Source of the DNA: Hypanus sabinus
Taxonomy: Eukaryota
Length of the DNA: 64,000 nt
Direction: 5' to 3'
NCBI RefSeq assembly: GCF_030144855.1
Contig: NC_082710.1
Span: 149,172,001 to 149,236,000, forward strand
The translations under genes and the position numbers were made by a program. The notes beneath the pieces were generated by a model. The model worked only from the letters and a program-made list of their open reading frames with translations, searched no databases and was not told the DNA's origin. Below, in pieces: positions 11,122-49,700 of the stretch. Each line of letters opens with the position of its first letter. The stretch's first letter is position 1.

Positions 11122-11429
11122 CCTGCTTTACTGATGAAGCAGCCTGTTTGAAAACAGGGGGTGAGGAAGGAGAGGACATGATCTTGTATCTTGGGGCTGC
11201 AGCCTTGGATCAGGGAACAGTCAGAGTTCCTCCATTGTACGTGTGGGCTGGCAGGGTCAGGATCCAGTGGAGGACCATCTGATGAGTTTTGTCTGAACTG
11301 GGCCAGGGAGGGTTTAGAACAGGTGTGGTTGAACCTTTGAGGTGATGGGCCTAGTAGATGAGAAATATTCTTCGTGAGGGTTTCCAGTGGAGATAGACCA
11401 ACCTCCAAGATGATTGGTTGAGTAGGCAA

Positions 11430-20090: not shown

Positions 20091-20243
20091 TCGCAGCCCT
20101 CTACATTCTCAATCCCTCGGCACTGGCGATCACTGGAATTCTACAAATGATTCTCGCCATGCTGAATCTCTTTAGCGGGTTATCTTTCTCCTCCTGTGTC
20201 ATTTCCCTCGAGTCTGACCCCCCGGGTCTGTTCCCGGGATCTG

Positions 20244-20490
20244 TGACGTCAGGACCCCGCCTCTCCCTCCCGTTCCCATACTTTCGATTTTGATTCCCAA
20301 CTCCGCTCACTCCACCCTTCCCGGCAACCGATGACTCACAGAGCAGCTCTTTTTCTGATTGGACGGATGCGGATATTTGCAATTTTATTTCCAAAACGAC
20401 TCAAACTTCTCTGACCAGTTCTGCCCAGAAACCACTGACGCTAAACAGAGTCGGATTACGATTGGGCTGCACTATCGCGCGGACCAATCA
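20244..20490 (+). promoter_or_regulatory. MHC class I promoter: CRE, ISRE and SXY module
   Basis: TGACGTCA (20244-20251); ISRE-like ACTTTCGATTTT (20280-20291); X1-like CCCAGAAACC (20424-20433); X2 TGACG (20436-20440); Y-box GATTGG (20460-20465) about 20 bp downstream; second CCAAT (20484-20488). Confidence 0.75.
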
Positions 20491-20627
20491 GCGTGCAGTT
20501 CGGGAATGAACCTGACGGGCATCGCCCAGCGACGGCAGATTTTGAGGTGCGGTGAGCCGAGTGCCATTGGTGCTGTGTAGTGGCGGAGGACTTGGGAACT
20601 CGAAACAGTTCGGATAGAGAGGGAATA

Positions 20628-20679
20628 ATGATGCTGCAGCTACTACTGCTGGCCCTCCTATGTGGAGGGGTCTCCGCAG
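20628..20679 (+). CDS. MHC class I exon 1, signal peptide MMLQLLLLALLCGGVSA
   Basis: 52 nt, ending at the G|GTGAGT donor. Confidence 0.93.
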
Positions 20680-26600: not shown

Positions 26601-29600
26601 TTTGGTGATCTGAAGGTCTCTAGTTCGAGCCTTGGCTGAGAGTGTGTTGTGTCCTTCAGCAAGGCACTTAACCACACACTGCTCTGCGACGACACCGGTG
26701 CCGAGCTGCATGGGACCTAATACTCTTCCCTTGGACAACATTGGTGCTGTGGAGAGGGGAGACTTGCAGCCTGGGCAATTGTCGATCTTCCATAAAGAAA
26801 ATCTTGTCTAGGCTTGCGGCCTGGAAACTTTCCAAGGCACAAATCCATGGTCTATCGATACTAACAGACCCGTACCGCCCTACCTGGTGGTCACCCACCT
26901 CCTCCTCCTGGACCTGTGATGTGACCAGATCACTAAGTGAACCTTTTACCACATTCTCTGCATCTAAAATGCCCCAGAGTCCAGCAGCTGTGTTTGTTCT
27001 GCCATGAACTGTGGTTGGACACATGTCCCACAGTGTTAATGGTGAGTGGGAATGTCTCTGTACTCACACATCCTTCAGGAGGGACAGACCAATGTCCTCA
27101 CCTCCCCAGTCTCCCCTGAAAGAATAGGTGATTGTTTGCTCCAGTTGTCCATCAAAACATCTGTGAGATGTCATTTGCCTCATTGACCAACACAATCTGA
27201 GGATGTTTTGGGGGAAGCCCTCAAGTGTTACTTTGCTTCTGGTCAGTGTCCCCTCTGATCTGTAATGACCAGTCTGCTCAAAAATCTGGTGCTGGGCAAG
27301 TTTTTGCCCAGTGATAATGACACTGAATTTTTCAGTGGAAGTAAGCCTGAAGGTATTCTGAGGATAATAAATTGCCAAGTTCTGTTTGTTGTTCAAAATA
27401 ATACACATCACTGAGTTTTATTTCTCATATACAATAGCCAGTTCTGAAATCTGCAGACAAATCGTCACAAACACCAGGTTGTCAACACCGTCCACATCAG
27501 AAACCGGAAAAGGAAAAGTAATTGTGTACCATTATGAAATATACTTAATGTTCCAACCCTTTGCGCACAATTAAAATTCCTTTGTGTGCGAGTAGCAAAA
27601 TTAGACCTTAAAGAGAACATTTAATGCCAACATAGCATGCCCAAAACGTATAGCCTGTATGTCTATGGCATGTGGGAGGAAACTGGAGTTTCTGGTTGAA
27701 ACTCAAACATTCATGGGGAGAATGTACAAACTCCTTGCAGAGTTTAGCTGGAATTGAACCCAGATCCTTGACACTATAAAGTGCTTTGCTAACCGCTATA
27801 TTACTGTGCAATTCCTTTACCAAAGGCCAAATGTTACAGAATGGCCGCACCCTCTTTTCCTACCCTTCCTATTGCTTTCCTCCACCAGTGATGCCTCAAA
27901 TTCCTCCTATTTACTGTTGCCTCTGGTACTGTTGACTGAGTGACATCCTGTCCATCAATGGAGAATATGTCCTGCTCTTAGATCCTCTCTCTGCTTTGAG
28001 TGTGGCTCCTGGGGTGAGGGGTCAGTCCTGATTCACCAGTTTTGTGATCCCGATTCTCTCAGGGGTTTGAGGTGGACCCCAGTGTCTCAAGTTGCTGGTT
28101 TCAGGCATAGGTCCTTCCTGAAATTTGGACTCCCAGCCCCTCTAACTCTCTGCTCTGGTTCCAGGCTCTCACTCTCTCCGTTATTTCTACACGGGGGTGA
28201 CCCCGGGGTCAGGGGTCCCTGAGTTCATTACCGTCGGGTATGTGGATGAAGAGTCAATCGATCACTACGACAGTGAGTTGGGGAAGGCAGTTCCCCGTCA
28301 GCAGTGGATGGCAGAGAGTCAGGGACCCGACTACTGGGAACGGAACACACAGATCTATAAGGAATGGGAGCAGTGGTTCAAGGCCAACATCCCGATCGCC
28401 ATGAGCCGGACCAACCAGTCAGGGGGTGAGTGGTGAACAACGTGGAAAGTGGGGGTGATGGTAGGGACTGGGCATGGGGTTGTTATGGGGGGTAATGATA
28501 AGGATTGTGGGGGGTAATTGAAGATTGTAAGGGGGGGATGGGGTAACTGGGGATTGTGGGGGTGACTGGGTAACTGGGGTTGGGGGACAGGGATAACTGA
28601 GGGGTGTGGTAAGTCTGGGGATGTGGGGACATGGGGTAACCGTGAGGATTGTGGAGGGGACGGGTGAAACTGAGGATTGTGGGAGGACGGGTTAACTGAG
28701 GATTGTGGGAGGACGGGTTAACTGAGGATTGTGGAGTGTCATGAAAATTTAACCTTAGGTGAAAAGAATACTTGACCCCTGAGTCTTGTTTCAGGACCTT
28801 TGTTTTACTTGAAATCAAGGAGAGAGAGCTGGTCTCCACCAGACCCAACTCTACTCTCCTGTTATAATAGCGTTGTTTTATACAGTTGAGCATAGTAACA
28901 GCAGACTTACTATAAATTATTGTATAGGGCTATTACCACAGTAACAGTATTTTACCGTTCACTGAAAAAAAACTTAGAGAATGGCACAGTTACAAGTTAA
29001 ACATATCTTGCAGAGCTCAGCACATTAGTTTCTGTTTCTCTGGTCGCAGCAGATTAGACTCAAACATTATCTTGCAAGAGTTAGCATGTAATGTTCTCTG
29101 TTTGCACATAATGCTTTTTGCTTTGCCTCCACTCCTTTTTGATCTTCTAGATCAACACTCATATTGTTTACCCTATTCACATTTGTATTCTCTCATTGAG
29201 TCTCTCTCTAGGAGGGGCCTCGTAACCCTCAGAAAAGGGGTGCAATTTCAGACATTCCTCCTCCTCGTAGCTGTCACTACTGTCCTCTTCCTCCTCCCCT
29301 TCTCTGGAGGTACCAGGCCTTCCTGTTGGTCTTCGTACATACATGGGGGCCAGAGTCATTGGGCCAGGCCCTCTGGAGGGTAGTAGGGCACAGAGGAATC
29401 TCGTGGCCAGTAAACAAATGACCACAATTACAAGTATTATAAGCAGGCTAGTGGCATCAGTGTTGGACTTCGGAGTGAAGGCTCCCGAGTTTGAATCCAG
29501 CCGGCTCCCTAGTATGCTTTTCATCCATGCTGGGCTGAGCGCCAAGCTAGCAACTCGGCCTTGTAAAAATAAGAAAGCCTGCTAAAAAAAAAACCCGTCA

Positions 29601-31702
29601 TGACAGCGTCCCTGTGACTCCACTTGGAGTTAAGGGCTTTCTTCTTCTTCTACAAATATTATCCCATAATGTACCACCAGCCACCATTCTCCCCGAGGTG
29701 GGTTATAGTTGCGGAACTGCCTGCTAACCTGTTTTATTTTAGTCATTGATTTCTTCATGATCTGCAAGATTAGTGATGGTGTGGCTCCTTTCACTCGACT
29801 CGGCAGCTGAACAGGTGCTATTCACTCAAGTTCACTCCAGTCTGTTGTTCCTTGTTAGTGTTAAGGTTGGGTTGGGGTTAGGATTGGATGTATCCAGTCG
29901 GATGGCATTTGCTACCTTCTGTAGTGAGGAGAATGCCGTCCTCCCTCTGAGTGGTGGCAGCCCCAGCGGTGATCATTGAAAAATCCATCCCTAGAGTGCT
30001 TGAGTGGCGTGAATCCAGTCGGGTTTTCCTTCTCCCTTCATTGTGGTCCAAGTGACCAACCGGACTGATAGGATCCTCTCCAACTAGGAGAGAAAGAATC
30101 TTTTATCATAGTTTGAACGTATACCCAGCCCCCTGGTTTGAAAGGGTACACATTTCCTTCAGAGAATTTGGACATCCCTCACTTTGCTGTTTAGCTTTTC
30201 CACCTGGGGACACAGTGCTTGTGCATATTTTAGGGTTTTTCATCGTTCCAGATCAAAGCCACTCTCTCCGGTGTCATCGGGAGCTTCAGCCCCGTTGTCA
30301 TTGGTCTACCCATGAATATTTCGTCTCGGGTGAACCCCATACTCCTATTCTTCCGGTTTTGCAAAGCATCCATTACCGGAGGCAAATCCTCTGACAGTTT
30401 AAGATCATTCTGCTGACACACCTAGCCTGGCGCATTTCTTGGGGTTGATAGGGAATCTGTAATTTCCACTGAAATCCCAGGGTGACTTTCAGCCCTTTCA
30501 CTAATCTGTTAGTAAAATGAGTTCCCCTGTCACTATTAATGCACAGTGGAATCCCAATTCTTGGTAGGATTTCCTTCATTGGGGCATTCACTACTGTGCT
30601 GGCATCATCCTTCCTGCCCGGGAATGCCTCCACCCACTGAGAGAACATCTCTCTTACCACCAATAGAGCAGCGGCCCTGGCTGAGGCGGATACTGGTTGC
30701 CAGCAGTACAATACTGCAGTATCATGACAACCATCCACTCTTCCTTCCAGTGAGCTTTAACATCTGCGGGAGATCCACATAAATGGCATCAGATCGACAG
30801 TACAAGGTCGCACCTAACTTACAATCCCTTATCTCACGCAAGTTACATGTTCCAACATAGGGCCAATCTCCTTGTGACCACCCGTACAGGTCACTACTAA
30901 ACGTTACCCCGTATCGATCATCCCGTTTCACGTATTACTGTATCGGCCGGCGATCCGGGCGGTACCAGGGTCCCCAATTAATTTTCGATGCTCTCTTACC
31001 TTCTCGAGTGCTTCTCCATCTTTTTACCGACTCTCAAGGTTCCTTCATCAGCAGGACCAGCATTACCTGATCGACCGCTGCCGTTCCCATCCTTCTTGCC
31101 TTTTTCTCTTCTTCCTGTCAGCAGAGTGGTTTAATTTTCATGTCCCCCAAACCCCAGTTTCCCTTTGAGTTCTCACCGGTTCACGTGATCCCTTCCCGAG
31201 CAGTGGGAGTCGAGTCGCTGCGTTCTTTATGATTTCTTCCAATTTCACCCCCTATCTTTTCCCAGTTCCCCAGGAACTGAGTGTCCGGACGGAGATAAGT
31301 AATCCCGGAGTTGTCTCTACACTGGACGGCCTCGGAATGCCTTACTCCCAGAGTTCGGTCCCTCGAGCTGTAATCACTCCTGCCAAATCTCTCACTTCTT
31401 ACAAATCTACTCAATTGCCAGATTGTGAATGTTTGGTCCCGGCTCTCCCTTTTACCGTTGGATCAGCCGGGACTTTCCCCCAGACACAAGAGTCGCAGCT
31501 GCCTTGTGCACGTTAGGATCGCGACCATCAATCGCTTTCCTTTTCTACAGGGGTTTTCCCAGCTGTCCCCCCGCTCGTATCTCATTAACGCTGGGATCCT
31601 GCCGACTTGCGCCAGATGGTCGTGGAAATTTGACCTTCGGAGGGTGAAAGGAATGCTCGACTCCAGAGTCTGGTTTCGGGACCTTTATTTTACTTGGGAT
31701 CA

Positions 31703-31767
<65 letters not shown>

Positions 31768-34700
31768 GGTCTCCACCAGCACCCGACTGTACTCACCTGT
31801 TACAATTGTGTCCTTTCATACTGTTCAGCATAGCAACAGCAGACTTATTATAATACGTCCAATCATTGTATAGAAATATTATCACTCTGTCAATATGTTA
31901 CCATTCACTAAAGAAAACAGGGAAAAGTGAAGTTACAAGTTAAACTACCTCGCAGAGCTCAGTACATTAGCTGTTGTTTCTCTGGTTGCAGCAGATTTGA
32001 CTCGTACCTTATCCCGCAAGAGCTTGCACGTAATGTTCTGTATTTGCACAGGAGGGTCTTTGCTTTGCTGTCTCCTCGACCCTTGTCACGTAGCTTATTA
32101 ACCCTTTTCCTCCACATGGAGGGTAACTGTAGGGATTGTGGAGGGGGTGGTGACTGCGGGGGGGGGGGGTGGGTTATTGTGGGGTGATGGAGTAACTGGG
32201 GATTGTTGTGAAGGCAGAGGTAACTGGGGATTGTGGGGGGACTGGGTAACTGGTGATTGTGGGGAAGGCACCGTAAATTCCGGTGTATAAGCCGACCCCT
32301 TTTGAAGTGGATTTTGATTTAACCAGAAAAAAGTGACAAGATCTCACATGCCAGTACTCAGCTTTGCCGGATCCGGAACCTGGAAATTTTGTGAACCAGT
32401 ACCTGCTAAGAAAATAGGCCCACACATTGTAGAGCATTATAAGTGAATTCTTAATAAATAAATCAAGCAGGGAAGTTTTGGATTTGGTCTCCAATGGTAA
32501 AAAATCCTTAGAAATGTAACCCCCGTGAAACCATTTAGCGCCCACCGTAATCTCGTTAAAACGTAACACGGGGTGGCGGGATCAGGACGTGTACTCAGTA
32601 TTGAGTTTGCGACCACCACATACAAAAGATTAAAACGAATGGGATATGATGCTGGCTTCAAGCTGAAGGTTGTTGATTTTGCTAAAGGAATGAATAACCC
32701 TGCAGCTGCTAAGAAGTTTAGGGTAAAAGAGAAGCAAGTGAGAGAGTGGAGAAAGGCAGAGGACACGCTGAGGGAAATGCCAAAGGTAAAATGTGCAAAC
32801 CGCAGGAAATCATGCCAGCGGCCAGAACTGGAAGAAAAAGTTGTAGAGTGTGTGAATCACCAGCGATCGTCTGGATACGTTGTTACCAGACAAATGATTC
32901 GAGTTCAAGCGTTGAAATGGGGCGAAAAACACCGTGAGGTCAGCAAAAATTTCAAAGCTACACGAAGGTGGTGCACCCGATTTACGAATAGACGTGATCT
33001 TGTGTTGAGACAAAAAACAAAGCTTGCTCAGAAGTTGCCGAACGACCTTGAGAATAAGATTATGGCCTTCCAATCGTTTGTAATCAAGCATCGAAAGGCG
33101 CTTTCTTACCCGCTCTCACTGATTGGTAACATGGACGAGGCACCAACGTTCTTTGATTTTGCTGGCAACCGCACTGTCAATCGGACGGAAAAGTCGCTAC
33201 CTGTCTGGGACATGTTCAAAGTGCACTTGTCAGGTGAGACAAAATCAGCACTGAGCGCTGAAAATGCGGACATTGCCGTCATCCCCGGTGGTGTGACATC
33301 CATGCTCCAGCCACTAGATGTGAGTTTAAACAAACCGTTCAAAGAATTCATGAGTCGACAGTGAAGCTGCAAATGACGAAGTGGAAGCAGAAATTGACAA
33401 TCATATGATATGGTGACTGCGGAAGAATGGGACACGATTTCCTTCCGTGTATTCGTCTTTCCAAAGTTGGCATCCTCTGTATAAGCCGACCCCCTAATTT
33501 TAGGACCAAAATTTAGGGCCAAATTCTCGGCTTATACATCGGAATTTACAGTAGAAATTATCTCACAGGAGTTAGCATGTACTGTTCCCTATGTGCACAC
33601 GAGGGATTTTGCTTTGCCTCCACAAATCCCTCGTTGCTGACCTTCTAGCTCAACACTCATATCGTTTACCCTGTTCACATTCGTATTCTCTCATTGAGTC
33701 TCTCTCTAGGGGGGGCCTCATAACCCTCAGGAAAGGGGTGCAATTTCAGAAATTCCTCCTCCTCATAGCTATCACTACTGTCCTCTTCCTCCTCCCCTTC
33801 TCTAGAGGTACCAGGCCTTCCCATTGGTCTTGGTACATACATGGGGGCCAGAGTCATTGGGATCTACCCTCGGGAGGGCAGTAGGGCACAGAGGAATCTT
33901 GTGGCCAGTAAACAAATTACCACAGTTACAAATATTGTCCCATAATGTACCAGCGTCCCCCACCAATTTCCAAGCGACCACCACTCTCCCCCAGATTGGG
34001 TATAGTCGTGGATATAGTTTCTCAACTTTCTCAAATCGCTCCGTTTTGGAGATTGCCCTCTTCTTGTTTCTGCTTTCACCCTTTTCCCAGTGTGGGTGGT
34101 CTGTTAAAGAGGGGTACTTCCTAACCGGGGGTACTGCAAACCCAGGGTACCAGTCATTCTTTAGCCAGGGGTAAACTTGCTCTCCACAGATCTAAAAGGT
34201 GTTGTTTGGCAGAGGTGGGGAGTGGGGAAGGTAGTACTACTGTGGCCGGTCCAATTACTCTTCTTTTCTCCGTTCACTTACTCCATCCTGTCTTCCACAG
34301 TCCATTCTCCTTACACCAACAGGCGTCTCCTCTCTGTCTTATATACTACCATCCAAGAGTCTGAAATGTCAAGGTAACATGGGAAATAGGGTCCATTTAG
34401 CAGACCGGTTAGCCCCCTCAGTTCCATTCCCCATTCCCCTGTGCCATCTCTGCCTCGCCAGCAATGTGTCCATCCTCTGGGCCGTTGTAGGTGGTACCAC
34501 TGGGGGTAAAATTGTTCCCCACGACATGGGGCCTGCTCCTCCCATCCAAATCCTATAAGTCCCCTCCTCTTTTTTTGGTGAGGGGTATAGACACAAAGGG
34601 CATCTTCCGTCCTCCTCCGGTGTGTGCTGGTATCACCATACAGACCCAACAGCTTGTGTGGGTGGTGCTATTCACATAATCATACGCCAACTGGAGGAAG

Positions 34701-37700
34701 GTATTCTTGGATTCAACTCCGATTCCTCTGATTACAGTGGTTAATAGTCCAGTTATTAACAGTGAGTGGGACCACAAGGTGGTGTGGCTCCTTTCACTCG
34801 ACTCGGCAGCTGAACAGGTGCTGTTCACTCCAGTTCACTCAGGTCTGTTGTTCCTCTCCTTTCTCGTAGTGCCGTTTGCACCGAGGGGCGTGAATCCAGT
34901 CGGGTTTTCCTTCTCCCTTCACTGCGGTCCGAGTGACCAACCGGACTGATAGGGTCCTCTCCACCTCGGAGAGAAAGATCCTTTTGTCACAGTTCGAACA
35001 TATACCCAATCTGCTGGTTTGAAGAGGTGCACATTTCCTTCAGTCGGGAGTCTGGGCATCCCTCACTTGGCCAGGAAGCTTTTCCACCTGGGGACACAGT
35101 GCTTGTGCATATCTTAGGGTTTTTCATCATTCCAGATCAAAGCCACTCTCTCCGGTGTCATCGGGAGCTTCAGCCCCGTTGTCATTGGTCTACTCATGAA
35201 TATTTTGTGTGGGGTGAACCCCGTAATCCTATTCTTCTGGTTTTGCAAGCATCCATTACTGGAGGCAAATCCTCTGACAGTTTAAGATCATTCTGCTGAC
35301 ACACCTAGCCTGGTACATTTCTTATTTCTCCGTTTACCCTTTCCATCATTCCCGAGGATTGGGATTGATAGGGAATGTGTAACTTCCACTGAAATCCCAG
35401 GGCGACTTTCAGCCCTTGCACTAATCTGTTAGTAAAATGAGTTCCCCTGTCACTATTAATGCAGAATGGAATCCCAAATCTTGGTAGGATTTCCTTCATT
35501 AGGGCATTCACTACTGTGCTGGCATCATCCTTCCTGCCCGGGAATGCCTCCACCCACTGAGAGAACATCTCTCTTACCCCCAATATATACTTGTGGCCTT
35601 TCTGCACTGAGATACGCACAAAGTCTATCTGTAAGTTTCCAAACGGCATTTCTGTCTGGGACAAATGATCATAGTTTGCTGGAGTCTTCCCTTTACTGTT
35701 CTGCTGACCGTGCATGTCCGTGCGACCCTCTCGACTGTGACAGTTATCCCAGGGGCTTACCATTGCTGACGAGTCGCACGGTGCGTCCCTTCCTTGCCCA
35801 TGTGAGTCTGGCCATGGGGCGAGCAAGCCGGGGTGAAAACAAGCTTTGGGGGCAAACAACACGCCCACCAGGGTGGCAGCTTCTGTCCACGCGCACTTTT
35901 CTTGTGGTGTGGCAAGATCTTGGGCTTGTTGCAATCTGTCGATCCTGATGGCAGTGAGGAGCTGTCCCTCCCCTGTTGCCACCCAGGGGGGTGTGGGGGG
36001 GGCTGTAATATCGGCTGCTGCTGGAGCACCACCTACTTCACTGTTGTGTCAGTGAAATGATTCCCTTTGGAGACCTCGTCTCCTGCCGAGGTCTGTGCCT
36101 CACATTTAATGATGGCTCAGGCTGCGGCAACTGGATGGCCTCCAACAAGTTAATAACCAGTTGAGAATGTTTGATAGGTTTTCCAAAGGAGGTATTGAAT
36201 CCTCTGTTCTTCCAGAGCTGTCCAGAATCATGGGCTACTCTCAGCTATAACAGGAATCAGTGTCAATGTTCACAGTCTGGCCTGAGGCCGAGTGGTTCTG
36301 CTCCCTGTGTGGACGTTCCGTTTGGCAGGGCGTCAAGCCTCTACAATCTCATTGGCAAAATGCTGTGTGGCGGCAGAATTGAGGAGCAGGGTCACGGCAC
36401 GGGGTACCAACACAACACAGGGGGGATCAAGCACTCTGGGGATGGGTTTTTCAATCATCACGGGTGGGGCTGCCACCACTCGGAGGAAGGAGGGCACTCC
36501 CCTCACTACGGCAGGTAGGAAGGCGGAGTAATAGGCTGCTGGTCGCTTGCCACCCCGGTATTTTTGGCATTTTACTCCGGTAGCAAGTCCTTCCTTCTTG
36601 TTAAAGTACAGCAGGAAAGGCTTCTCAGAGTCAGGTAGGCCCAGGGCTGGCGCCTCACGAAGGGCATCTTTCCGTGTATCCCTGGGGCAATCGGGACCAT
36701 TTACACTGCAGGTTCTTGTAGGTGAAAGTGAATAGGTACTGGCTGTCAGCATGTAGAGGTATAGAAAAATCCAGAACGTAAGTCTATGACAGTGAAGGTA
36801 CTGGCGGAGGTGCGTGTAGAAGTGAGGATGATGTTGGTATTGGGGATCAGTGGGGCAATGGGGATAACGATCTAATTGGGTCCTGCACGAATCGCCATTC
36901 GTTCTCCCTCCCTGGTTTCAGAATCAGAAGGGTGTAACATCTGTAGCAGGTGTTACAGGCACAATGCCTTCCTCTGCCTGAGCTGTCAGGCAATATTGTT
37001 TCACGCAGGGCAGGAGGGATCCCTTCTTGAGGGTCACCTGTTGTTCTGGAGCCGTGCGCACCAGACCGACGTGGTTCTCATGTAGGGCCCACAGTCCCGT
37101 GTTAACGCCGGCGAGAGCTTTCAGGTAGAGCAGCGGCCCTGGCTGAGGCGGACACTGTCGCTGGAATAATGCATTTAACAGTAATCCTTCCTGTCTGCCT
37201 GTCAAAGATCTCGATGGTGAGCGTAATCGCTCCCGGGATTAGAACAGAGATTGTATGGACTGGGTGTGAAATTTGTGACAGACGGTGCACCGTAGGTCCA
37301 ATGTGCTTTGGTTTAGCGGTGGGGGGAGCTTACAGCCACTGTGATGTGGAGTCCACAGGACCCCTGTGAGAGAGCCCCTCTGTTTTCCATCTGTCTCACT
37401 GTTGTTTAGTTCTACTGCTACTCCCAGCCCTTCGGTGCTGAGGAACAGAAAGGGCCCAGTACTCAAGGTCCCCGTGCCTCCCACACAGGGGGGCTGCCAG
37501 CTCATCGTAGGTGGGATCTGTGCCCTGCCTGGAGAAAGCGGTGCAGTGAAGCACCTTGCTTTCCTGTCTGGTTTCGAGGAGGTGTTGCAAATACTGTCCT
37601 TGCAAGTCAGGGGAATCCCTCAGTGCTGTACACGGTGTTTGTACGAGCGGGGAGAAAGGGTTGCAACCCGGTTGCCAGCAGTACAATACTGCAGTATCAT

Positions 37701-40700: not shown

Positions 40701-43700
40701 TGAGAGAGTGGAGAAAGGCAGAGGACACGCTGAGGGAAATGCCAAAGGTAAAATGTGCAAACCGCAGGAAATCATGCCAGCGGCCAGAACTGGAAGAAAA
40801 AGTTGTAGAGTGGGTGAATCACCAGCGATCGTCTGGATACGTTGTTACCAGACAAATGATTCGAGTTCAAGCGTTGAAATGGGGCGAAAAACACCGTGAG
40901 GTCAGCGAAAATTTCAAAGCTATTCAAGGTGGTGCAGCCGATTTACGAATAGACGTGATCTTGTGTTGAGACAAAAAACAAAGCTTGCTCAGAAGTTGCC
41001 GAACGGCCTTGAGAATAAGATTATGGCCTTCCAATCGTTTGTAATCCAGCATCGAAAGGCGCTTTCTTACCCGCTCTCACTGATTGGTAACATGGACGAG
41101 GCACCAACGTTCTTTGATTTTGCTGGCAACCGCACTGTCAATCGGACGGAAAAGTCGCTACCTGTCTGGGACATGTTCAAAGTGCACTTGTGAGGTGAGA
41201 CAAAATCAGCATTGAGAGCTGAAAATGCGGACATTGCCGTCATCCCCGGTGGTGTGACATCCATGCTCCAGCCACTAGATGTGAGTTTAAACAAACCGTT
41301 GAAAGAATTCATGCGTCGACAGTGAAGCTGCAAATGACGAAGTGGAAGCAGAAATTGACAATCATATGATATGGTGACTGCGGAAGAATGGGACACAATT
41401 TCCTTCGTGTATTCGTCTTTCCAAAGTTGGCATCCTCTGTAAAAGCCGACCCCCTAATTTTAGGACCAAAATGTAGGGCCAAATTCTCGGCTTATACATC
41501 GGAATTTACAGTAGAAATTATCTCACAGGAGTTAGCATGTACAGTTCCCTATGTGCACACGTGGGATTTTGCTTTGCCTCCACAAATCCCTCGTTGTTGA
41601 CCTTCTAGCTCAACACTCATATCGTTTACCCTGTTCACATTCGTATTCTCTCATTGAGTCTCTCTCTAGGGGGGGCCTCATAACCCTCAGGAAAGGGGTG
41701 CAATTTCAGACATTCCTCCTCCTCATTGCTATCACTACTGTCCTCTTCCTCCTCCCCTTCCCTAGAGGTACCAGGCCTTCCTGTTGGTCTTCGTACATAC
41801 ATGGGGGCCAGAGTCATTGGGTTCTACCCTCGGGAGGGTAGTAGGGCACAGAGGAATCTCGTGGCCAGTAAACAAATTACCACAGTTACAAATATTGTCC
41901 CATAATGTACCAGCGTCCCCCACCAATTTCCCAGCGGCCACCACTCTCCCCCAGGTTGGGTATAGTCGTGGATATAGTTTCTCAACTTTCTCAAATCGCT
42001 CCGTTTTGGAGATTGCCCTCTTCTTGTTTCTGCTTTCACCCTTTTCCCAGTGTGGGTGGTCTGTTAAAGAGGGGTACTTCCTAACCGGGGGTACTGCAAA
42101 CCCAGGGTACCAGTCATTCTTTAGCCAGGGGTAAACTTGCTCTCCACAGATCTAAAAGGTGTTGTTTGGCAGAGGTGGGGAGTGGGGAAGGTAGTACTAT
42201 TGTGGCCGGTCCAATTACTCTTCTTTTCTCCGTTCACTTACTCCATCCTGCCTTCCACAGCCCATTCTCCTTACAGCAACAGGCGTCTCCTCTCTGTCTA
42301 TATACTACCATCCAAGAGTCTAAATGTCAGGGTAACATGGGAAATAGGGTCCATTTAGCAGACCGGTTAGCCCCCTGCATCCCATTCCCCAGTGCCATCT
42401 CTGTCTAGCCAGCAATGTGTCCATCCTCTGGGCCGTTGTAGGTGGTACCACTGGGGGTAAAATTGTTCCCCACGACATGGGGCCTGCTCCTCCCATCCAA
42501 ATCCTATAAGTCCCCTCCTCTTTTTTTTGGTGAGGGGTATAGACACAAAGGGCATCTTCCGTCCTCCTCCGGTGTGTGCTGGTATCACCATACAGACCCA
42601 ACAGCTTGTGTGGGTGGTGCTATTCACATAATCATACGCCAACTGGAGGAAGGTATTCTTGGATTCAACTCCGATTCCTCTGATTACAGTGGTTAATAGT
42701 CCAGTTATTAACAGTGAGTGGGACCACAAGGTGGTGTGGCTCCTTTCACTCGACTCGGCAGCTGAACAGGTGCTGTTCACTCCAGTTCACTCAGGTCTGT
42801 TGTCCCTCTCCTTTCTCGTAGTGCCATTTGCACCGAGGGGCGTGAATCCAGTCGGGTTTTCCTTCTCCCTTCACTGCGGTCCGAGTGACCAACCGGACTG
42901 ATAGGGTCCTTTCCACTTAGGAGAGAAAGATCCTTTTGTCACAGTTCGAACATATACCCGATCCCCTGGTTTGAAGAGGTGCACATTTCCTTCGGTCGGG
43001 AGTCTGGGCATCCCTCACTTGGCCAGGAAGCTTTTCCACCTGGGGACACAGTGCTTGTGCATATTTTAGTGTTTTTCATCGTTCCAGATCAAAGCCACTC
43101 TCTCCGGTGTCATCGGGAGCTTCATTCCCGTTGTCATTGGTCTACCCATGAATATTTTGTCTCGGTGAATCCCATAATCCTATTCTTCCGGTTTTGCAAG
43201 CATCCATTACCAGAGGCAAATCCTCTGACAGTTTAAGATCATTCTGCTGACACAGCTAGCCTGGTGCATTTCTTATTTTGTCCGTTTACCCTTTCCATCA
43301 TTCCCGAGGATTGGGATTGATAGGGAATGTGTAACTTCCACTGAAATCCCAGGGCAACTTTCAGCCCTTGCACTAATCTGTTAGTAAAATGAGTTCCCCT
43401 GTCACTATTAATGCAGAATGGAATCCCAAATCTTGGTAGGATTTCCTTCATTAGGGCATTCACTACTGTGCTGGCATCATCCTTCCTGCCTGGGAATGCC
43501 TCCACCCACTGAGAGAACATCTCTCTTACCCCAATATATACTTGTGGCCTTTCTGCACTGAGATACACACAAAGTCTATCTGTGAGTTTCCAAACGGCAT
43601 TTCTGTCTGGGACAAATGATCATACTTTGCTGGAGTCTTCCCTTTACTGTTCTGTCGACATTTCAAGCATGTCCGTGCGACCCTCTCGTCTGTGACAGTT

Positions 43701-46700
43701 ATCCCAGGGGCTTACCATTGCTGACGAGTCGCACAGTGCATCCCTCCCTTGCCCATGTGAGTCTGGCCATGGGGCGAGCAAGCCAGGGTGAAAACAAGCT
43801 TTGGGGGCAAACAACACGCCCACCAGGGTGACAGCTTCTGTCCACGCGCACTTGTGGTGTGGCAAGATCTTGGGCTTGTTGCAATCTGTCGATCCTGATG
43901 GCAGTGAGGAGCTGTCCCTCCCCTGTTGCCACCCAGGGGGTGTGGGGGGGGGCTGTAATATCGGCTGCTGCTGGAGCACCACCTGCTTCACTGTTGTGTC
44001 AGCGAAATGATTCCCTTTGGAGCCCTCGTCTCCTGCCGAGGTCTGTGCCTCACATTTAATGATGTCTCAGGCTGCGGCAACTGGATGGCCTCCAACAAGT
44101 TAATAACCAGTTGAAAATGTTTGATAGGTTTTCCAGAGGAGGTAATGAATCCTCTGTTCTTCCAGAGCTGTCCAGGATCATGGGCTACTCTCTCTAACAG
44201 GAATCAGTGTAAATGTTCACAGTCTGGCCTTGGGCCGAGTGGTTCTGCTCCCTGTGTGGACGTTCCGTTTGGCAGGGCGTCAGCCTCTGCAATCTCATCG
44301 GCAAAATGCTGTGTGGCGGCAGAATTGAGGGTCAGGGTCACGGCACGGGGTACCAACACAGCACAGGGGGGATCAAGCACTCTGGGGATGGGTTTTTCAA
44401 TCATCACGGGTGGGGCTGCCACCGCTTGGAGGGAGGGGGGCACTCCCCTCACTACGGCAGGTAGGGAGGCGGAGTAATAGGCTGCTGGTCGCTTGCCACC
44501 CCGGTATTTTTGGCATTTTACTCCGGTAGCGAGTCCTCGCTTCTTGTTAATGTACAGCAGGAAAGGCTTCTCAGAGTCAGGTAGGCCCAGGGCTGGTGCC
44601 TCATGAAGGGCATCTTTCCGTGTATCTCTGGGGCAATCGGGACCAAGTACACTGCTGGTTCTTGTAGGAGAAAGCGGATAGATACTGGCTGCCAGCATGT
44701 ATAGAAAAATCCAGAACGCAAGTCTATGACAGTGAAGGTACTGGTGGAGGTGCGTAAAGAAGTGAGGATGATGTTGGTATCGGGGAGCAGTGGGGCATTG
44801 GGGATAATGATCTTCTTGTTCTTGGGTCCTGCAAGAATCGCCATTCGTTCTGCCTTCCTGGTTTAGGAACGGGAAGGATGGGGGTGATGCAGCACCTCCT
44901 GTATCAGGTGTTACAGACACGATGCCCTCCTCTGCCTGAGCTGTCGGGCGATAATGCCGGCGAGAGCTTTCGAGTAGAGCAGAGGGTCTGGCTGGGATGG
45001 GCACTGTCACTGAAATAATGCCTTTAACATCACAGGTTTTAGAATAATCCTTCCTGTCTGCCTGTCAAAGATCTCGATGGTGAGCATAGTCGTGCCTGGG
45101 ATTAGAACAGAGATTGTCTGGGCTGGGTGTGTAATTTGTGACTGACAGTGCACCGTAGGTTCAGTGCGCTTTGGTCTGGCCTCATGGCCACTGTGAGCTG
45201 GGGGTCGACAGGACCCCTGTGAGAGAGCCCCTCTGTTTTCCATCAGTCTCGCTGTTGGTTGTTTAGTTCTGATACCCCCAGCCCTTTGGGGCCTAAGAAC
45301 AGAAGGGGCCCGGTTCTCGAGATCTCCCTGCCCCCAATGTCGGGGACTGCCTGCTCATCGTAGGTGGGATCTGCACCCTGCCTGTAGAATACATCAATTC
45401 CTCTGTGTCCGTCTCCAGGGGAGCACTCGGGGCCGACGGGAGATACTGTCCCAGTGGCGGTTGGGAGGTCAGGGGATTATACTTCTGCACTCATTTATCT
45501 TTCCTAGGGGGCCGGAGTCTCCTGGCTACCTCCACCCATTTATAAAAACAGCTGATCAAATAATCCATATCCCAATTCGGATCCCCATCTCTCATTTCCA
45601 CAGTCTCTTTCCAATCCCTTATCTCACGCAAGTTAAATGTTCCGACATAGGGCCAATCTCCTTGGGACCACCTGTACAGGTCACTACTAAATGTTACCCC
45701 GTATCGATCATCCCGTTTCACGTATTACTGTATCGGCCGGCGATCCGGGCGGTACCAGGGTCCCCAATTAATTTTCGATGCTCTCTTACCTTCTCGAGTT
45801 CTTCTCCATCTTTTTACCGACTCTCAAAGTTCCTTCATCAGCAGGACCAGCATTACCTGATCGACCGCTGCCATTCCCCATCCTTCTTGCCTTTTTCTCT
45901 TCTTCCTGTCTGCAGAGCGGTTTAATTTTCACGTCCCCCAAACCCCAGTTTCCCTTTGAGCTTTCACCGGTTCACGTGATCCCTTCCCGAGCAGTGGGAG
46001 TCGAGTCGCTGCGTTCTTTATGATTTCTTCCAATTTCCCCCCCTATCTTTTCTCAGTCCCCCAGGAACTGAGTGTCCGGACGGAGATAAGTACTCCCGGA
46101 GTTGTCTCTGCACTGGACGGCCTCGGAATGCCTTACTCCCAGAGTTCGGTCCCTCGAGCCAATCACTCCTGCCAAATCTCTCACATCTTACACATCGACT
46201 CAATTGCCAGATTGTGAAAGTTTGGTCCCGGCTCTCCATTTTACCGTTGGAGCAGCCGGGACTGTCCCCCAGACACAAGAGTCGCAGCTGTCTTGTGCAC
46301 GTTAGGATAGCGACCATCGATTGCTTTCTTTTTCTACAGGGGTTTTCCCAGCTGTCCCCCCGCTCGTATCTCATTAACGCTGGGATCCTGCCGACTTGCG
46401 CCAGATGGTCGTGGAAATTTGATCTTAGGTGAAAAGAATACTCGACTCCCAAGTCTCGTTTTGGGATCTTTATTTTACTTGGGACCAAGGAGAGAGAGAG
46501 AGAGAGAGAGAGAGAGCTGGTCTCCACCAGCACCAGACTCTGCTCTCCTTTTACAACAGTGTCCTTTTGAACAGTTCAATATAGCAACAGCAGACTTACT
46601 TACTATAATATATCCAATGGTTGTATAGGTACATTACCACTCACTAAGTATGTTACAGTTCAGTATAAAAAGCAGTTACAAGTTAAGCTACCTTGCAGAG

Positions 46701-49700
46701 CTCAGCACATTAGTTTGTGTTTCTGTCTTTGCAGCAGATTTGACTCGTACCTTATCTCACAAGAGTTAGCATGTAACGTTCTCTGTTTGCACACAGGCGT
46801 CTTTGCTTTGCTGTCTCCTAGTGGCTCTTTTCCTCCACATTGAGGGTATCTGTGGAGATTGTGCGGGGGGTGGGGTAGATTGTGGGGTGATGGGGTAACT
46901 GGGGATTGTGGGGTGATGGGGTAACTGGGGATTATGGGGGGTACAGGGTAACTGGGGGATGGGGTAACAGGTTTGTGGGGGTACAGGATAACGGGTTTGG
47001 GGTAGGGTAATGGGAGTGTGGGGGATGGGTGAAACTACAGAGGCACTGGGGATCGTGCAGGGTAGGGGTGACTGGGGATTGTGGGGTACAGGGGAACTGT
47101 GAGGTTTGTGGAGGAGTAATTGAGGATTGTGGGGAGACAGGGTATCTGTGGGTACTGGAGGGGGTTATCTGTGGGGATTGTTGGGACGGTGTAACTGGGG
47201 GGTACGGGGGATGGGGTAACTGGGGATTTGGGGGATATGGGGTAACTGGAGACTGTTGGGGGTGACGGGGTAACTGTGGGGATTGTAGGGGTGTGATTTG
47301 AGCCACGTTTAACAGATGTGGATGTCCCCCCTCCCCCCCCCCCCCCCCCGGGTGGTTCCAGGGATCCACACTTACCAGCAGATGTACGGCTGTGAGCTCC
47401 GTGACGACGGGACCACCACCGGGTTCCGTCAGCACGGCTGGGACGGGTCAGACTTCATCTCCTTCGACAAGGACCGGATGGTGTGGGTGACCCCTGTGCC
47501 CTGGGGTGTCATCACTAAGGACAAGTGGGACCGGAACACGGCCGGGAACCAGTATTGGAAGGGATACCTGGAGCAGGAGTGCATCGAATGGCTGAAGAAA
47601 TACATCAAGGCCGGGGAGAGTCACCTGAAACCCAGTGAGTGGTGGGGGGGGGGGGGGCAGAATGTATGTCTGGGAGTGACACCCCACAATTGCCCCATGC
47701 CCCCTTCCACCCATCTCCTCTCTCTCCCCCCCCGCTGTCTCCTTCCTTCCCCCCCGCCGTCTCCTTCCTTCCCCCCCGCCGTCTCCTTCCTTCCCCCCCG
47801 CCGTCTCCTTCCTTCCCCCCCGCCGTCTCCTTCCTTCCCCCCCGCCGTCTCCTTCCTTCCCCCCCGCCGTCTCCTTCCTTCCCCCCCGCCGTCTCCTTCC
47901 TTCCCCCCCGCCGTCTCCTTCCTTCCCCCCCGCCGTCTCCTTCCTTCCCCCCCGCCGTCTCCTTCCTTCCCCCCCGCCGTCTCCTTCCTTCCCCCCCGCC
48001 GTCTCCTTCCTTCCCCCCCGCCGTCTCCTTCCTTCCCCCCCGCCGTCTCCTTCCTTCCCCCCCGCCGTCTCCTTCCTTCCCCCCCGCCGTCTCCTTCCTT
48101 CCCCCCCGCCGTCTCCTTCCTTCCCCCCCGCCGTCTCCTTCCTTCCCCCCCGCCGTCTCCTTCCTTCCCCCCCGCCGTCTCCTTCCTTCCCCCCCGCCGT
48201 CTCCTTCCTTCCCCCCCGCCGTCTCCTTCCTTCCCCCCCGCCGTCTCCTTCCTTCCCCCCCGCCGTCTCCTTCCTTCCCCCCCGCCGTCTCCTTCCTTCC
48301 CCCCCGCCGTCTCCTTCCTTCCCCCCCGCCGTCTCCTTCCTTCCCCCCCGCCGTCTCCTTCCTTCCCCCCCGCCGTCTCCTTCCTTCCCCCCCGCCGTCT
48401 CCTTCCTTCCCCCCCGCCGTCTCCTTCCTTTCCCCCCGCCGTCTCCTTCCTTTCCCCCCGCCGTCTCCTTCCTTTCCCCCCGCCGTCTCCTTCCTTTCCC
48501 CCCGCCGTCTCCTTCCTTTCCCCCCGCCGTCTCCTTCCTTTCCCCCCGCCGTCTCCTTCCTTTCCCCCCGCCGTCTCCTTCCTTTCCCCCCGCCGTCTCC
48601 TTCCTTTCCCCCCGCCGTCTCCTTCCTTTCCCCCCGCCGTCTCCTCTCTCTCCCCCGCCGTCTCCTCTCTCTCCCCCGCCGTCTCCTCTCTCTCCCCCGC
48701 CGTCTCCTCTCTCTCCCCCGCCGTCTCCTCTCTCTCCCCCCGCCGTCTCCTCTCTCTCCCCCCGCCGTCTCCTCTCTCTCCCCCCGCCGTCTCCTCTCTC
48801 TCCCCCCGCCGTCTCCTCTCTCTCCCCCCGCCGTCTCCTCTCTCTCCCCCCGCCGTCTCCTCTCTCTCCCCCCGCCGTCTCCTCTCTCTCCCCCCGCCGT
48901 CTCCTCTCTCTCCCCCCGCCGTCTCCTCTCTCTCCCCCCGCCGTCTCCTCTCTCTCCCCCCGCCGTCTCCTCTCTCTCCCCCCGCCGTCTCCTCTCTCTC
49001 CCCCCGCCGTCTCCTCTCTCTCCCCCCGCCGTCTCCTCTCTCTCCCCCCGCCGTCTCCTCTCTCTCCCCCCGCCGTCTCCTCTCTCTCCCCCCGCCGTCT
49101 CCTCTCTCTCCCCCCGCCGTCTCCTCTCTCTCCCCCCGCCGTCTCCTCTCTCTCCCCCCGCCGTCTCCTCTCTCTCCCCCCGCCGCCTCCCCTCTCTCCC
49201 CCCGCCGTCTTCCGTCTCTGCCACCCCGCCGTCTCCACTCTCTCTCTGTCTTCTCTTCCTCTCGCCTTTTTCTCTCCGCCTTTGCCCTTTCCTATCACCC
49301 CCCTCCTCTTGCTCCCCTTTCTGCCCCCACTCACTGCCTCCTCTCCCCCCCCAGATCCCCCCGAAGTCTCGTTCACCGCCTCCAAGGATGGCCGCCTCCT
49401 CTCCTGTGTGGCCACTGGCTTCTACCCTCAGTCCATCGACGTGACGATTCTGCGGAATGGCCAGACCCTGGAGGAGGCCCATTCCCACGGGATCCTGCCC
49501 AATCACGACAACACCTACCAGCTGACCAGGACGGTGCAGGTGGAAGGCATGGACACAGGAAAGTTCTCCTGTCAGGTGGAACACCGGGGTCTCCCCGAGC
49601 CCCTCGTCCTGATCCAGGGTAAGAGACACGCACTAGTGGGGTGGTACATGGGCAGTGAGAGGGAGGGGGCTTGGCTGACCACTGGCCCAGGGCTGGGACA

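What the first reader, a model, noticed from the sequence alone, without database searches (positions are those of the whole stretch)
28426..47361. An 18.9-kb alpha1-alpha2 intron built from long direct repeats: candidate substrate for alpha1 exon shuffling and structural haplotype variation
Seen: intron 2 is mostly a G-rich repeat / ERV / pogo array with an ~8.0-kb offset between units (LTR ends 32116 and 40114; pogo starts 32271 and 40268). It is mosaic: copy A gag-leader-LTR is nearly identical to copy B, B env-integrase pairs with C, and the outer LTRs are much more diverged. Established: several teleost classical class I genes (salmonid UBA, medaka) recombine alpha1 lineages across a long intron at this same position. 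Inference: repeated unequal exchange or conversion has happened here, and the array could uncouple the two halves of the peptide groove in a cartilaginous fish. I am not aware of this being described for chondrichthyan class I, but could not check.
Basis: partly seen in the sequence, partly recalled or inferred. Interest (0 to 1): 0.8.

Follow-up and report, generated by a model that had tools for sequence, protein, structure and literature searches.

The report
Retrovirus-relic repeat array bloating stingray MHC intron
The 18.9-kb intron between the two peptide-groove exons of an intact Atlantic stingray MHC class I gene is 96% a three-unit tandem array of one dead endogenous retrovirus plus a pogo transposon; the array was built by unequal crossing-over, and nothing yet shows that it reshuffles the groove halves.

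Summary
The window carries one intact, classical-type MHC class I gene of Hypanus sabinus. Seven GT-AG exons reproduce the annotated 346-aa product exactly.

- **Intron 2:** it runs from 28426 to 47361. Bases 28737-46839 (95.6%) are three tandem copies (A, B, C) of one antisense gamma/epsilon-like ERV relic. A 153-nt G-rich host spacer and a pogo element with 26-nt inverted ends sit at each junction.
- **Origin of copy B:** B is a hybrid. Its left part matches C (2.44% divergence) and its right part matches A (2.34%). One unequal crossover explains this.
- **Older history:** the array edges differ by 15-19%, and interior segments differ by intermediate amounts. This points to an older duplication followed by homogenisation.
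- **Ancestral intron:** the host remnant is 833 nt of G-rich 26-nt minisatellite plus a poly-C run. The same design fills the short intron 2 of sawfish (0.29 kb) and skate (0.08-0.3 kb), and the α2-proximal end of a sevengill shark intron 2 (5.1 kb). The long intron is therefore not ancestral.
- **α1 versus α2:** α1 sides with Mobula and one Hemitrygon gene; α2 sides with other genes. This is suggestive only, because the partners were chosen after the fact and bootstrap support is low.
- **Untested:** any link between the array and α1 shuffling, and any haplotype variation.

Verdict: an ordinary mechanism in an interesting place.

The parts
20628..20679 (+). MHC class I exon 1 (coding part, leader peptide)
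   Evidence: Exon model reproduces P0153 exactly; leader located
28165..28425 (+). Exon 2, α1 domain
   Evidence: best solved relative is nurse shark MHC class I 6lup_A, E 5.5e-32
28426..47361 (+). Intron 2, 18,936 nt, GT..AG, phase 1
28444..28736 (+). Host G-rich 26-nt minisatellite, left remnant of the ancestral intron (49% G)
28737..32116 (-). ERV copy A: both LTRs (28737-29181 and 31617-32116), most of the interior lost and rearranged
32117..32269 (+). G-rich host spacer 1 (right flank of the ERV, duplicated with it)
32270..33552 (+). pogo-type DNA transposon copy 1: 26-nt terminal inverted repeats, internally shortened and broken transposase gene
   Evidence: Pfam BrkDBD, HTH_Tnp_Tc5 and partial DDE_1; inverted repeats
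33553..40114 (-). ERV copy B (hybrid): left LTR cut to 127 nt (33553-33679), right LTR 39651-40114, primer-binding-site-like sequence inside the right LTR
35305..36752 (-). Broken pol remnant of copy B (RT connection/RNase H-like segment to integrase core)
   Evidence: Pfam rve E 1.1e-11 and RT_RNaseH_2 E 2.7e-5; integrase relatives in PDB
40115..40266 (+). G-rich host spacer 2
40267..41512 (+). pogo-type DNA transposon copy 2 (1.9% from copy 1 together with the spacer)
41513..46839 (-). ERV copy C: left LTR remnant 41513-41639, right LTR 46406-46839, about 1.2 kb shorter than B
43239..45010 (-). Broken pol remnant of copy C (RT thumb/connection to integrase region)
   Evidence: PDB hits to MLV/XMRV reverse transcriptase p80, E about 1e-19; Pfam RT_RNaseH_2
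46840..47361 (+). Host G-rich minisatellite (right remnant), poly-C run and splice acceptor
47362..47634 (+). Exon 3, α2 domain
47714..49236 (+). 22-nt x 69 C/T-rich tandem array filling intron 3
49355..49618 (+). Exon 4, α3 domain
49912..50013 (+). Exon 5, connecting peptide and transmembrane region
51957..51998 (+). Exon 6, cytoplasmic
52240..52286 (+). Exon 7, cytoplasmic tail and stop codon

Best explanation
Intron 2 of an intact, classical-type MHC class I gene of the Atlantic stingray was originally a short intron (under 1 kb) made of a G-rich 26-nt minisatellite followed by a poly-C run.

1. One gamma/epsilon-like retrovirus integrated into that minisatellite, antisense to the gene. This is shown by LTRs with TG..CA ends, a 5-nt flanking duplication, a primer-binding-site-like sequence, and RT and integrase remnants.
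2. Long ago the provirus and about 150 nt of its right host flank were duplicated in tandem. This is inferred from the 15-18% divergence at both ends of copies A and C.
3. A pogo transposon sits exactly at the junction, where the second copy's left LTR is cut short (shown). It is open whether pogo caused that duplication or inserted afterwards.
4. Interior segments were later partly homogenised (inferred from 3-12% divergence in the interior).
5. Most recently, one unequal crossover between misaligned copies joined the left part of C (spacer, pogo, LTR remnant, integrase side) to the right part of A (gag side, right LTR, spacer). This created the middle copy B and the 8.0-kb period. It is shown by matching divergences of 2.44% and 2.34%, with the junction zone inside the pol remnant.
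6. Copy A has since lost most of its interior.

All copies are non-coding relics. What the array does for the gene is physical only: it adds 18 kb and several kilobases of direct homology between the α1 and α2 exons. An exchange there between homologues would recombine α1 with α2, but no such event is demonstrated.
For: Gene and splice model.

Repeat geometry.

A single integration followed by duplication, not three integrations:
- All three right LTRs are followed by the same host G-rich flank beginning TGGAG/TTGAG, and the same 5-mer precedes the A left LTR. TGGAG occurs only 6 times in 766 nt of flank.
- B and C share the identical pogo/LTR junction and the same 127-nt LTR remnant.
- The left-type and right-type LTR ends differ in all copies.

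Retroviral nature: rve and RT_RNaseH_2; MLV/XMRV RT hits at E about 1e-19; integrase hits; a primer-binding-site-like TGG... sequence 2 nt inside the right LTRs.

pogo: domains and 26-nt inverted ends.

Hybrid origin of B:
- B-C has 93 mismatches in 3,811 nt on the left; A-B has 33 in 1,409 nt on the right.
- B-C mismatch rises from 1-3% to 14-21% between about 35.7 and 36.9 kb.
- A keeps a 129-nt piece identical to the segment of B that C lacks.

Ancestral short G-rich intron: Pristis 291 nt of 28-29-nt G-rich repeats plus C20; Leucoraja about 80 and 300 nt; Heptranchias has a 61%-G block before α2. No ERV, pogo or G-rich repeat copy lies elsewhere in the window.
Against: - Only one haplotype of one individual was seen, so the array cannot be checked against reads.
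- Divergence is uneven within the right part of A-B (3.3% on the gag side against 0.9% in the LTR). More than one exchange or conversion may be hidden in what I count as one event.
- The 280-nt identical B-C run is only marginally unexpected (0.03-0.1 expected).
- The 5-nt target duplication lies in repetitive sequence and is weak on its own.
- The 19% difference between left and right LTRs could also mean the provirus was chimeric rather than very old.
- gag, protease, RT palm and env could not be recognised, so the internal map rests on position.
Confidence: 0.75

Rival explanations
1. One reading: the array is an active substrate for exchange between homologues, so α1 and α2 alleles are reassorted and structural haplotypes differ in unit number, as at salmonid UBA.
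For: - At least one unequal crossover occurred inside the intron.
- The gene has all classical groove-end residues.
- The window's α1 shares states with Mobula P0163/P0167 and Hemitrygon P0164, whereas its α2 shares states with Hemitrygon P0154, H. sabinus P0155/P0151 and Mobula P0156. Fisher p ranges from 1e-4 to 0.18 over 24 triplets.
- There is a teleost precedent (PMC6523485, PMC1971071).
Against: - There are no population or second-haplotype data.
- The exchanges seen could all be between sister chromatids, which do not reassort alleles.
- Comparison partners were chosen after seeing the identities, and NJ support is 24-52%.
- The sequences compared are genes from different loci and species, so gene conversion between loci or convergent selection on α1 would give the same pattern.
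- The long intron is absent from sawfish and skate class I genes.
Confidence: 0.2
2. The first duplication was produced by aberrant (alternative) transposition of the pogo element rather than by unequal exchange in the G-rich minisatellite. This would explain why pogo sits exactly at the junction between copies.
For: - pogo with intact 26-nt ends lies precisely between the host spacer and position about 325 of the next copy's left LTR.
- It has TA on its right side, at a site where the right LTRs carry TA.
- Copy A's left LTR is uninterrupted.
- Tandem duplications with the transposon at the junction are known from alternative transposition of other cut-and-paste elements. This point is from my own knowledge and was not checked here.
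Against: - The left side of pogo shows CA, not TA.
- The mechanism is documented for hAT and P elements, not, to my knowledge, for pogo.
- An ordinary insertion followed by an adjacent deletion gives the same end state.
Confidence: 0.2
3. Assembly artefact: two diverged haplotypes, or mis-joined reads, were stacked in tandem, and the real intron has fewer units.
For: MHC regions are heterozygous and repeat-rich. The 2-2.4% divergence between neighbouring units is in the range of deep haplotype differences. I could not examine reads.
Against: - There are no gaps (no N) anywhere in the window.
- The three units differ in structure, not only in substitutions. A has a full left LTR and no pogo, and C is 1.2 kb shorter than B.
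- The mosaic has different partners on the two sides of B, which stacked haplotypes would not give.
Confidence: 0.05
4. Three independent integrations of related retroviruses into the same intron.
For: The outer LTRs are 15-19% apart, as if from different elements.
Against: - The right host flank is the same after all three copies.
- B and C have the identical truncated LTR/pogo junction.
- Left-type and right-type LTR ends are shared across copies.
- Only one pair of matching 5-nt flanks is found, at the outside of the array.
Confidence: 0.02

Closest known systems
Salmonid (and cyprinid, medaka) classical class I genes with a large intron 2 used for α1/α2 recombination (Onmy-UBA, Sasa-UBA)
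   Same: Both have a long intron (over 10 kb) at exactly the same position, between the α1 and α2 exons of a classical-type class I gene. Both show evidence of past recombination inside the intron (PMC6523485, PMC1971071).
   Different: In the teleosts the recombination is shown between alleles: the same α2 occurs with very different α1 sequences. Here only exchange between intronic repeat units is shown. The long intron is lineage-specific and made of one amplified ERV. Related batoids have a 0.08-0.3 kb intron 2.
Tandem duplications by non-allelic homologous recombination, including tandem proviruses (own knowledge)
   Same: The array consists of head-to-tail units, has a hybrid middle unit, and has edges more diverged than the interior. 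These are the classical signs of unequal crossing-over.
   Different: The units do not share an LTR. Each junction holds 153 nt of host flank plus a pogo element, so the unit is a segmental duplication that contains the provirus, not an LTR-LTR recombinant.
G-rich minisatellites and retroelement remnants at recombination hotspots in mammalian MHC genes, such as the mouse Eb second-intron hotspot (recalled, not checked here)
   Same: A G-rich tandem repeat and retroelement-derived sequence lie in the intron that separates the polymorphic exons of an MHC gene.
   Different: No recombination-rate data exist for the stingray. The resemblance is by composition and position only.
Gamma/epsilon-like (class I) endogenous retroviruses of fishes
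   Same: The RT thumb/connection segment is closest to MLV/XMRV reverse transcriptase. An integrase core, LTRs with TG..CA ends and a primer-binding-site-like sequence are present.
   Different: gag, protease, RT palm and env are not recognisable, so the genus was not assigned.

Membership tests
Classical MHC class I gene (elasmobranch UAA type) | Complete leader-α1-α2-α3-TM-cytoplasmic reading frame with canonical splice sites | tested here: met
   Seven GT-AG exons translate exactly to the annotated 346-aa product P0153
Classical MHC class I gene (elasmobranch UAA type) | Conserved residues that hold the peptide ends (Y7, Y59, R/Y84, T143, K146, W147, Y159, Y171) | tested here: met
   All are present and identical to the nurse shark chain of 6LUP. 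Paralogues P0166 and P0155, and Hemitrygon P0164, each deviate at one or two positions
Classical MHC class I gene (elasmobranch UAA type) | High allelic polymorphism and linkage to TAP/PSMB genes | not testable with these tools
   Only one haplotype is available. No TAP or PSMB gene lies in the 64-kb window, and the flanking ORFs searched gave only reverse-transcriptase fragments
Teleost-type intron-2 α1 shuffling locus | Intron 2 of 10 kb or more between the α1 and α2 exons | tested here: met
   18,936 nt
Teleost-type intron-2 α1 shuffling locus | Alleles of one locus that share α2 and downstream sequence but carry divergent α1 lineages | not testable with these tools
   No allele set is available for Hypanus sabinus. 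Cross-species and cross-locus site patterns are only suggestive
Teleost-type intron-2 α1 shuffling locus | Large intron 2 shared by related species at the classical locus | tested here: not met
   Pristis about 291 nt, Leucoraja about 80 and 300 nt, Heptranchias 5.1 kb. DNA of the closest relatives (Hemitrygon, Mobula) could not be fetched
Endogenous retrovirus (provirus) | Two LTRs with TG..CA ends, flanked by a short target-site duplication | tested here: met
   LTRs of 432-498 nt. TGGAG lies on the left of copy A and after the A and B right LTRs, and TTGAG after C. The duplication lies in repetitive DNA, so it is weak evidence
Endogenous retrovirus (provirus) | Retroviral reverse transcriptase and integrase | tested here: met
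   MLV/XMRV RT p80 at E about 1e-19; Pfam rve at E 1e-11; PFV/HTLV integrase at E about 1e-7
Endogenous retrovirus (provirus) | gag and env genes | tested here: inconclusive
   No Pfam or PDB match for any ORF piece in the expected positions. The copies are heavily decayed
pogo/Tigger DNA transposon (Tc1/mariner superfamily) | Transposase with CENP-B/Brinker-type and Tc5-type DNA-binding domains plus a DDE_1 catalytic domain | tested here: met
   BrkDBD E 1e-12, HTH_Tnp_Tc5 E 2e-8, DDE_1 partial (profile positions 73-128 of 177) E 4e-4. The catalytic domain is incomplete
pogo/Tigger DNA transposon (Tc1/mariner superfamily) | Terminal inverted repeats and a TA target duplication | tested here: inconclusive
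   26-nt inverted ends are 92% complementary. TA is on the right side only and CA on the left
Tandem provirus formed by LTR-LTR recombination (shared LTR between units) | Adjacent units separated by a single shared LTR with no host DNA between them | tested here: not met
   Each junction holds a right LTR, 153 nt of host spacer, a pogo element and a truncated left LTR

The most novel reading that the evidence does not exclude
A G-rich minisatellite on the sense strand, just upstream of the α2 exon, may be an ancient, conserved part of elasmobranch class I genes. I found it in a sevengill shark, a skate, a sawfish and this stingray. It could act as a recombination or conversion-prone joint that lets α1 lineages persist across species and be recombined with different α2 exons. 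The stingray ERV/pogo array would then be one product of that instability, and now a much larger target for it.
Probability: 0.12. Interest if true: 0.7.

Novelty: new member of a known kind. Interest (0 to 1): 0.35.

Why it matters
If exchange in this intron also occurs between homologues, a cartilaginous fish would be reassorting the two halves of the peptide groove in the same way as salmonids. That would push this mode of MHC diversification back to the base of jawed vertebrates, or show that it arose twice.

As it stands, the locus is useful in three ways:
- It is a clearly readable record of unequal crossing-over inside an immune gene.
- It gives a ready marker (number of 8-kb units) for haplotype surveys in stingrays.
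- It points to a conserved G-rich minisatellite in elasmobranch class I intron 2 that nobody seems to have described.

Tried and rejected
**DNA of relatives not retrievable**
- DNA of the H. sabinus paralogues and of the closest relatives (Hemitrygon akajei P0164, Mobula birostris P0163, Chiloscyllium P0177) could not be fetched because the assembly files are too large. Only gene spans were returned: 18.4, 27.5, 27.5 and 36 kb.
- P0153, P0162 and P0225 are not on record in the index.

**Weak or empty results**
- NJ trees per domain gave low support: 52% for window + Mobula P0163 in α1, and 24% for the α2 grouping. I therefore do not claim tree incongruence.
- Pfam on ten further minus-strand ORF pieces of copy B found nothing relevant.
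- PDB searches with putative env-side and gag-side ORFs found nothing.
- No tRNA gene and no Rfam family lies in 28-50 kb. My idea that an A-specific segment is a tRNA-derived SINE is unsupported.
- No other copy of the ERV, pogo or G-rich repeat lies in the window outside intron 2.
- No second α1-like exon is hidden in the intron.

**Readings rejected**
- Three independent integrations.
- A shared-LTR tandem provirus.

**Errors of my own, corrected**
- A first exon model starting α1 at 28158 was wrong; the acceptor is before 28165.

**Not done**
- I did not count frameshifts against a reference Pol because no full-length relative was available through the tools.

Full report
**What the window holds**

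The window contains one MHC class I gene on the + strand.
- The α1 exon translation is most similar to the nurse shark class I chain of PDB entry 6LUP (E 5.5e-32).
- A search restricted to the α2 exon found a 346-aa protein, P0153, at 99% identity. Its source names it 'class I histocompatibility antigen, F10 alpha chain-like isoform X2 [Hypanus sabinus]'. The window is therefore Atlantic stingray DNA.
- Joining seven exons as they stand gives P0153 exactly, with GT-AG at every intron. The exons are 20628-20679, 28165-28425, 47362-47634, 49355-49618, 49912-50013, 51957-51998 and 52240-52286.
- Against a horse class I sequence used for numbering, the product has Y7, Y59, R84, T143, K146, W147, Y159 and Y171. 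This is the same set as the nurse shark chain, while several paralogues and relatives deviate.
- Only one α1-like, one α2-like and one α3-like exon exist in the window.

**The observation**

Direct repeats fill the intron.
- Repeat families have spacings of 7,946-8,037 nt and 6,745-6,755 nt.
- Self-BLAST gives blocks up to 4.6 kb at 95.7% identity.
- There is no N in the window.
The LTRs end at 32116 and 40114. The pogo ends start at 32270 and 40267, one base earlier than stated.

**Anatomy of intron 2**

From left to right:

| Coordinates | Feature |
|---|---|
| 28444-28736 | G-rich 26-nt minisatellite |
| 28737-32116 | ERV copy A |
| 32117-32269 | 153-nt G-rich spacer |
| 32270-33552 | pogo |
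| 33553-40114 | ERV copy B |
| 40115-40266 | spacer |
| 40267-41512 | pogo |
| 41513-46839 | ERV copy C |
| 46840-47361 | G-rich minisatellite, poly-C run and AG acceptor |

The mobile-element array is 18,103 nt, or 95.6% of the intron. The host remnant is 311 + 522 nt.

*The ERV* lies on the minus strand, antisense to the gene.
- Pfam finds an integrase core (E 1.1e-11) and an RNase H-like RT domain on that strand.
- The largest ORF piece of copy C matches the thumb/connection region of MLV and XMRV reverse transcriptase (E about 1e-19).
- The integrase piece matches foamy-virus and HTLV integrases weakly.
- The LTRs start TG and end CA. A sequence beginning TGG lies two bases inside each right LTR, where a primer-binding site belongs.
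- The 5-mer TGGAG precedes copy A's left LTR and follows the right LTRs of A and B. C has TTGAG. This 5-mer occurs 6 times in 766 nt of flank, so the match is meaningful but not strong.

*State of the ERV genes.*
- Every copy is a relic. The longest minus-strand ORFs are 136 aa in A, 225 aa in B and 268 aa in C.
- In B, the RNase H-like and integrase matches lie in separate ORFs in two different frames, with a third ORF between them. That means at least one in-frame stop and at least one frameshift within that stretch of pol.
- In C, the integrase region is split over at least two ORFs.
- In A, pol is almost wholly deleted.
- RT palm, protease, gag and env were not recognisable in any copy, so their breaks cannot be counted.
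- Relative to B, copy C lacks about 1.2 kb. Copy A lacks more than 3 kb and carries a small inverted fragment.

*The pogo element* has Brinker/CENP-B-type and Tc5-type DNA-binding domains and part of DDE_1 on the + strand, plus 26-nt inverted ends. At 1.25-1.28 kb it is internally shortened and its reading frame is broken.

**One integration, then duplication**

Four findings show this.
- All three right LTRs are followed by the same host G-rich sequence.
- B and C share the same junction: spacer, pogo, then a left LTR cut to its last 127 nt.
- The left-type LTR end differs from the right-type end in every copy.
- Only the outside of the array carries the matching 5-nt flanks.

Three separate integrations cannot explain these findings. 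A shared-LTR tandem provirus is also excluded, because host DNA and pogo lie between the units.

**The mosaic and what it means**

| Comparison | Segment | Divergence |
|---|---|---|
| B vs C | spacer + pogo | 1.9% |
| B vs C | LTR remnant to integrase | 2.7% |
| B vs C | the two combined | 2.44% (93 of 3,811) |
| A vs B | gag side | 3.3% |
| A vs B | right LTR + spacer | 1.1% |
| A vs B | the two combined | 2.34% (33 of 1,409) |

- Between about 35.7 and 36.9 kb (B coordinates), the B-C mismatch rises from 1-3% through 8% to 14-21%.
- Copy A retains a 129-nt piece that is identical to the part of B that C lacks.
- An unequal crossover between a misaligned C and A predicts exactly this pattern: a new middle unit with a C-type left part and an A-type right part, both the same age, and two identical spacer-plus-pogo junctions.
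- The array edges are much older. The A left LTR is 81% identical to the right LTRs, the C right LTR is 85% identical to those of A and B, and the B/C left remnants are 82-83% identical to the A left LTR.
- Interior blocks of A against B or C are 88-96% identical, and the gag side of all three differs by 3-5.5%.

The history therefore needs an old first duplication, nearly as old as the integration, then later homogenisation, then the recent crossover. A 280-nt identical B-C run is only marginally unexpected (0.03-0.1 expected).

How the first duplication arose is open. One route is exchange within the flanking minisatellite, followed by pogo insertion and an adjacent deletion. The other is aberrant transposition of pogo, which would place the element at the junction directly.

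**The intron in relatives**

| Species (locus) | Intron 2 | Content |
|---|---|---|
| Pristis pectinata (L001) | about 291 nt | 28-29-nt G-rich repeats followed by C20 |
| Leucoraja erinacea (L002) | about 80 nt | G run and GT repeats |
| Leucoraja erinacea (L003) | about 300 nt | G/GT-rich repeats of about 27 nt |
| Heptranchias perlo (L004) | 5.1 kb | two 31-nt minisatellite arrays and a 61%-G block just before α2 |

- The sources are for Pristis, for Leucoraja, and for Heptranchias.
- In L002 the long intron is intron 3, about 14 kb.
- In the window, 12 of the 28 plus-strand G-quadruplex-type motifs lie in the 1.1 kb of host intron-2 remnant.
- The ancestral batoid intron 2 was thus short and G-rich. 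Its 18.9-kb size in this gene is a lineage-specific result of the ERV, pogo and duplications.
- The gene spans of the likely closest relatives, Hemitrygon P0164 and Mobula P0163, are both 27.5 kb. This leaves room for a shared large intron, but their DNA could not be fetched.

**α1 versus α2**

- By domain, the window's α1 is closest to Mobula P0167 (85%, partial), Mobula P0163 (79%) and Hemitrygon P0164 (78%). Paralogues from its own species are at 69-72%.
- Its α2 is closest to Hemitrygon P0154 (84%) and H. sabinus P0155 and P0151 (83%).
- Site patterns flip between the two exons in all 24 triplets examined, with Fisher p from 1e-4 to 0.18.
- The partners were chosen after seeing the identities. 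NJ bootstrap support is low. The sequences are genes from several loci and species, not alleles.
- I take this as a hint that α1 and α2 have partly separate histories in myliobatiform rays, and no more than that.

**Literature**

- The teleost precedent is documented. Rainbow trout has an intron of more than 10 kb between the α1 and α2 exons that was used for allelic recombination. Cyprinids show similar evidence, and some medaka alleles have a large intron (PMC6523485). In Atlantic salmon, UBA exon 2 is shuffled through intron 2 (PMC1971071).
- The recent survey of elasmobranch MHC organisation does not contain the word 'intron' at all. It notes extra Ia-like genes near the true Ia gene (PMC10751288).
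- I found nothing on α1 shuffling or intron 2 in cartilaginous fish. The library does not cover most subscription journals.

**Verdict**

- The structure is real and well explained by ordinary processes: one old retroviral insertion, a transposon, and unequal crossing-over.
- It proves that exchange has occurred between the α1 and α2 exons. It does not prove that this ever reassorted alleles.
- It is a new example of a known kind. Interest is moderate, mainly because of where it lies and because of the conserved G-rich minisatellite.

While reasoning about whether G-rich intron 2 is general for class I genes, I began to recall a human HLA intron sequence from memory.

Noticed in passing
window 47714-49236: Intron 3 is almost entirely a 22-nt C/T-rich tandem array of 69 copies with 97% matches. 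It keeps a 768-codon frame open from 47316 to 49622 without being coding. It is C-rich on the strand where intron 2 is G-rich.
   Followed up: partly
L001 8231-8521; L003 about 10210-10521; L004 about 9980-10574; window 28444-28736 and 46840-47361: A G-rich minisatellite (47-61% G, units of about 15-29 nt) lies in intron 2 next to the α2 exon in sawfish, skate, sevengill shark and stingray class I genes. In sawfish and stingray a long poly-C run follows it.
   Followed up: partly
L004 7001-8642 and 8960-9833: Intron 2 of the Heptranchias perlo class I gene (5.1 kb) holds two large 31-nt minisatellite arrays of 53 and 28 copies. The same intron has therefore been inflated by a different route.
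   Followed up: no
L002 about 15260-29155: In the Leucoraja erinacea gene for P0175 the long intron (about 14 kb) is intron 3, between α2 and α3, while intron 2 is about 80 nt.
   Followed up: no
window 20680-28164: Intron 1 of the stingray gene is also long (7,485 nt). The sawfish gene likewise has a first intron of several kilobases (L001: α1 starts at 7967 in a locus whose gene starts at 501).
   Followed up: no
window 10912-11123, 16091-16287, 17086-17740, 55874-56038: Further tandem repeats flank the gene: 70-nt units upstream (three arrays, the largest with 9.6 copies) and an 18/36-nt array downstream.
   Followed up: no
window 8328-8993 (-) and 62338-62853 (+): Two ORF pieces outside the gene match the reverse transcriptase family RVT_1 (E 4e-17 and 3e-14). 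They are other retroelement remnants with no DNA similarity to the intron-2 ERV.
   Followed up: no
proteins P0151, P0152, P0155, P0001: Several annotated class I products of Hypanus sabinus and a relative are fusions, with two α1-α2-α3 sets or repeated α3 or TM segments. This suggests tandem class I genes merged by gene prediction. At least five distinct class I genes lie on the same 187-Mb chromosome record.
   Followed up: no
window 31705-31765 and the matching places in the other right LTRs: A (GA)n microsatellite inside the LTR differs in length between copies and is longest in copy A, with 30 repeats.
   Followed up: no
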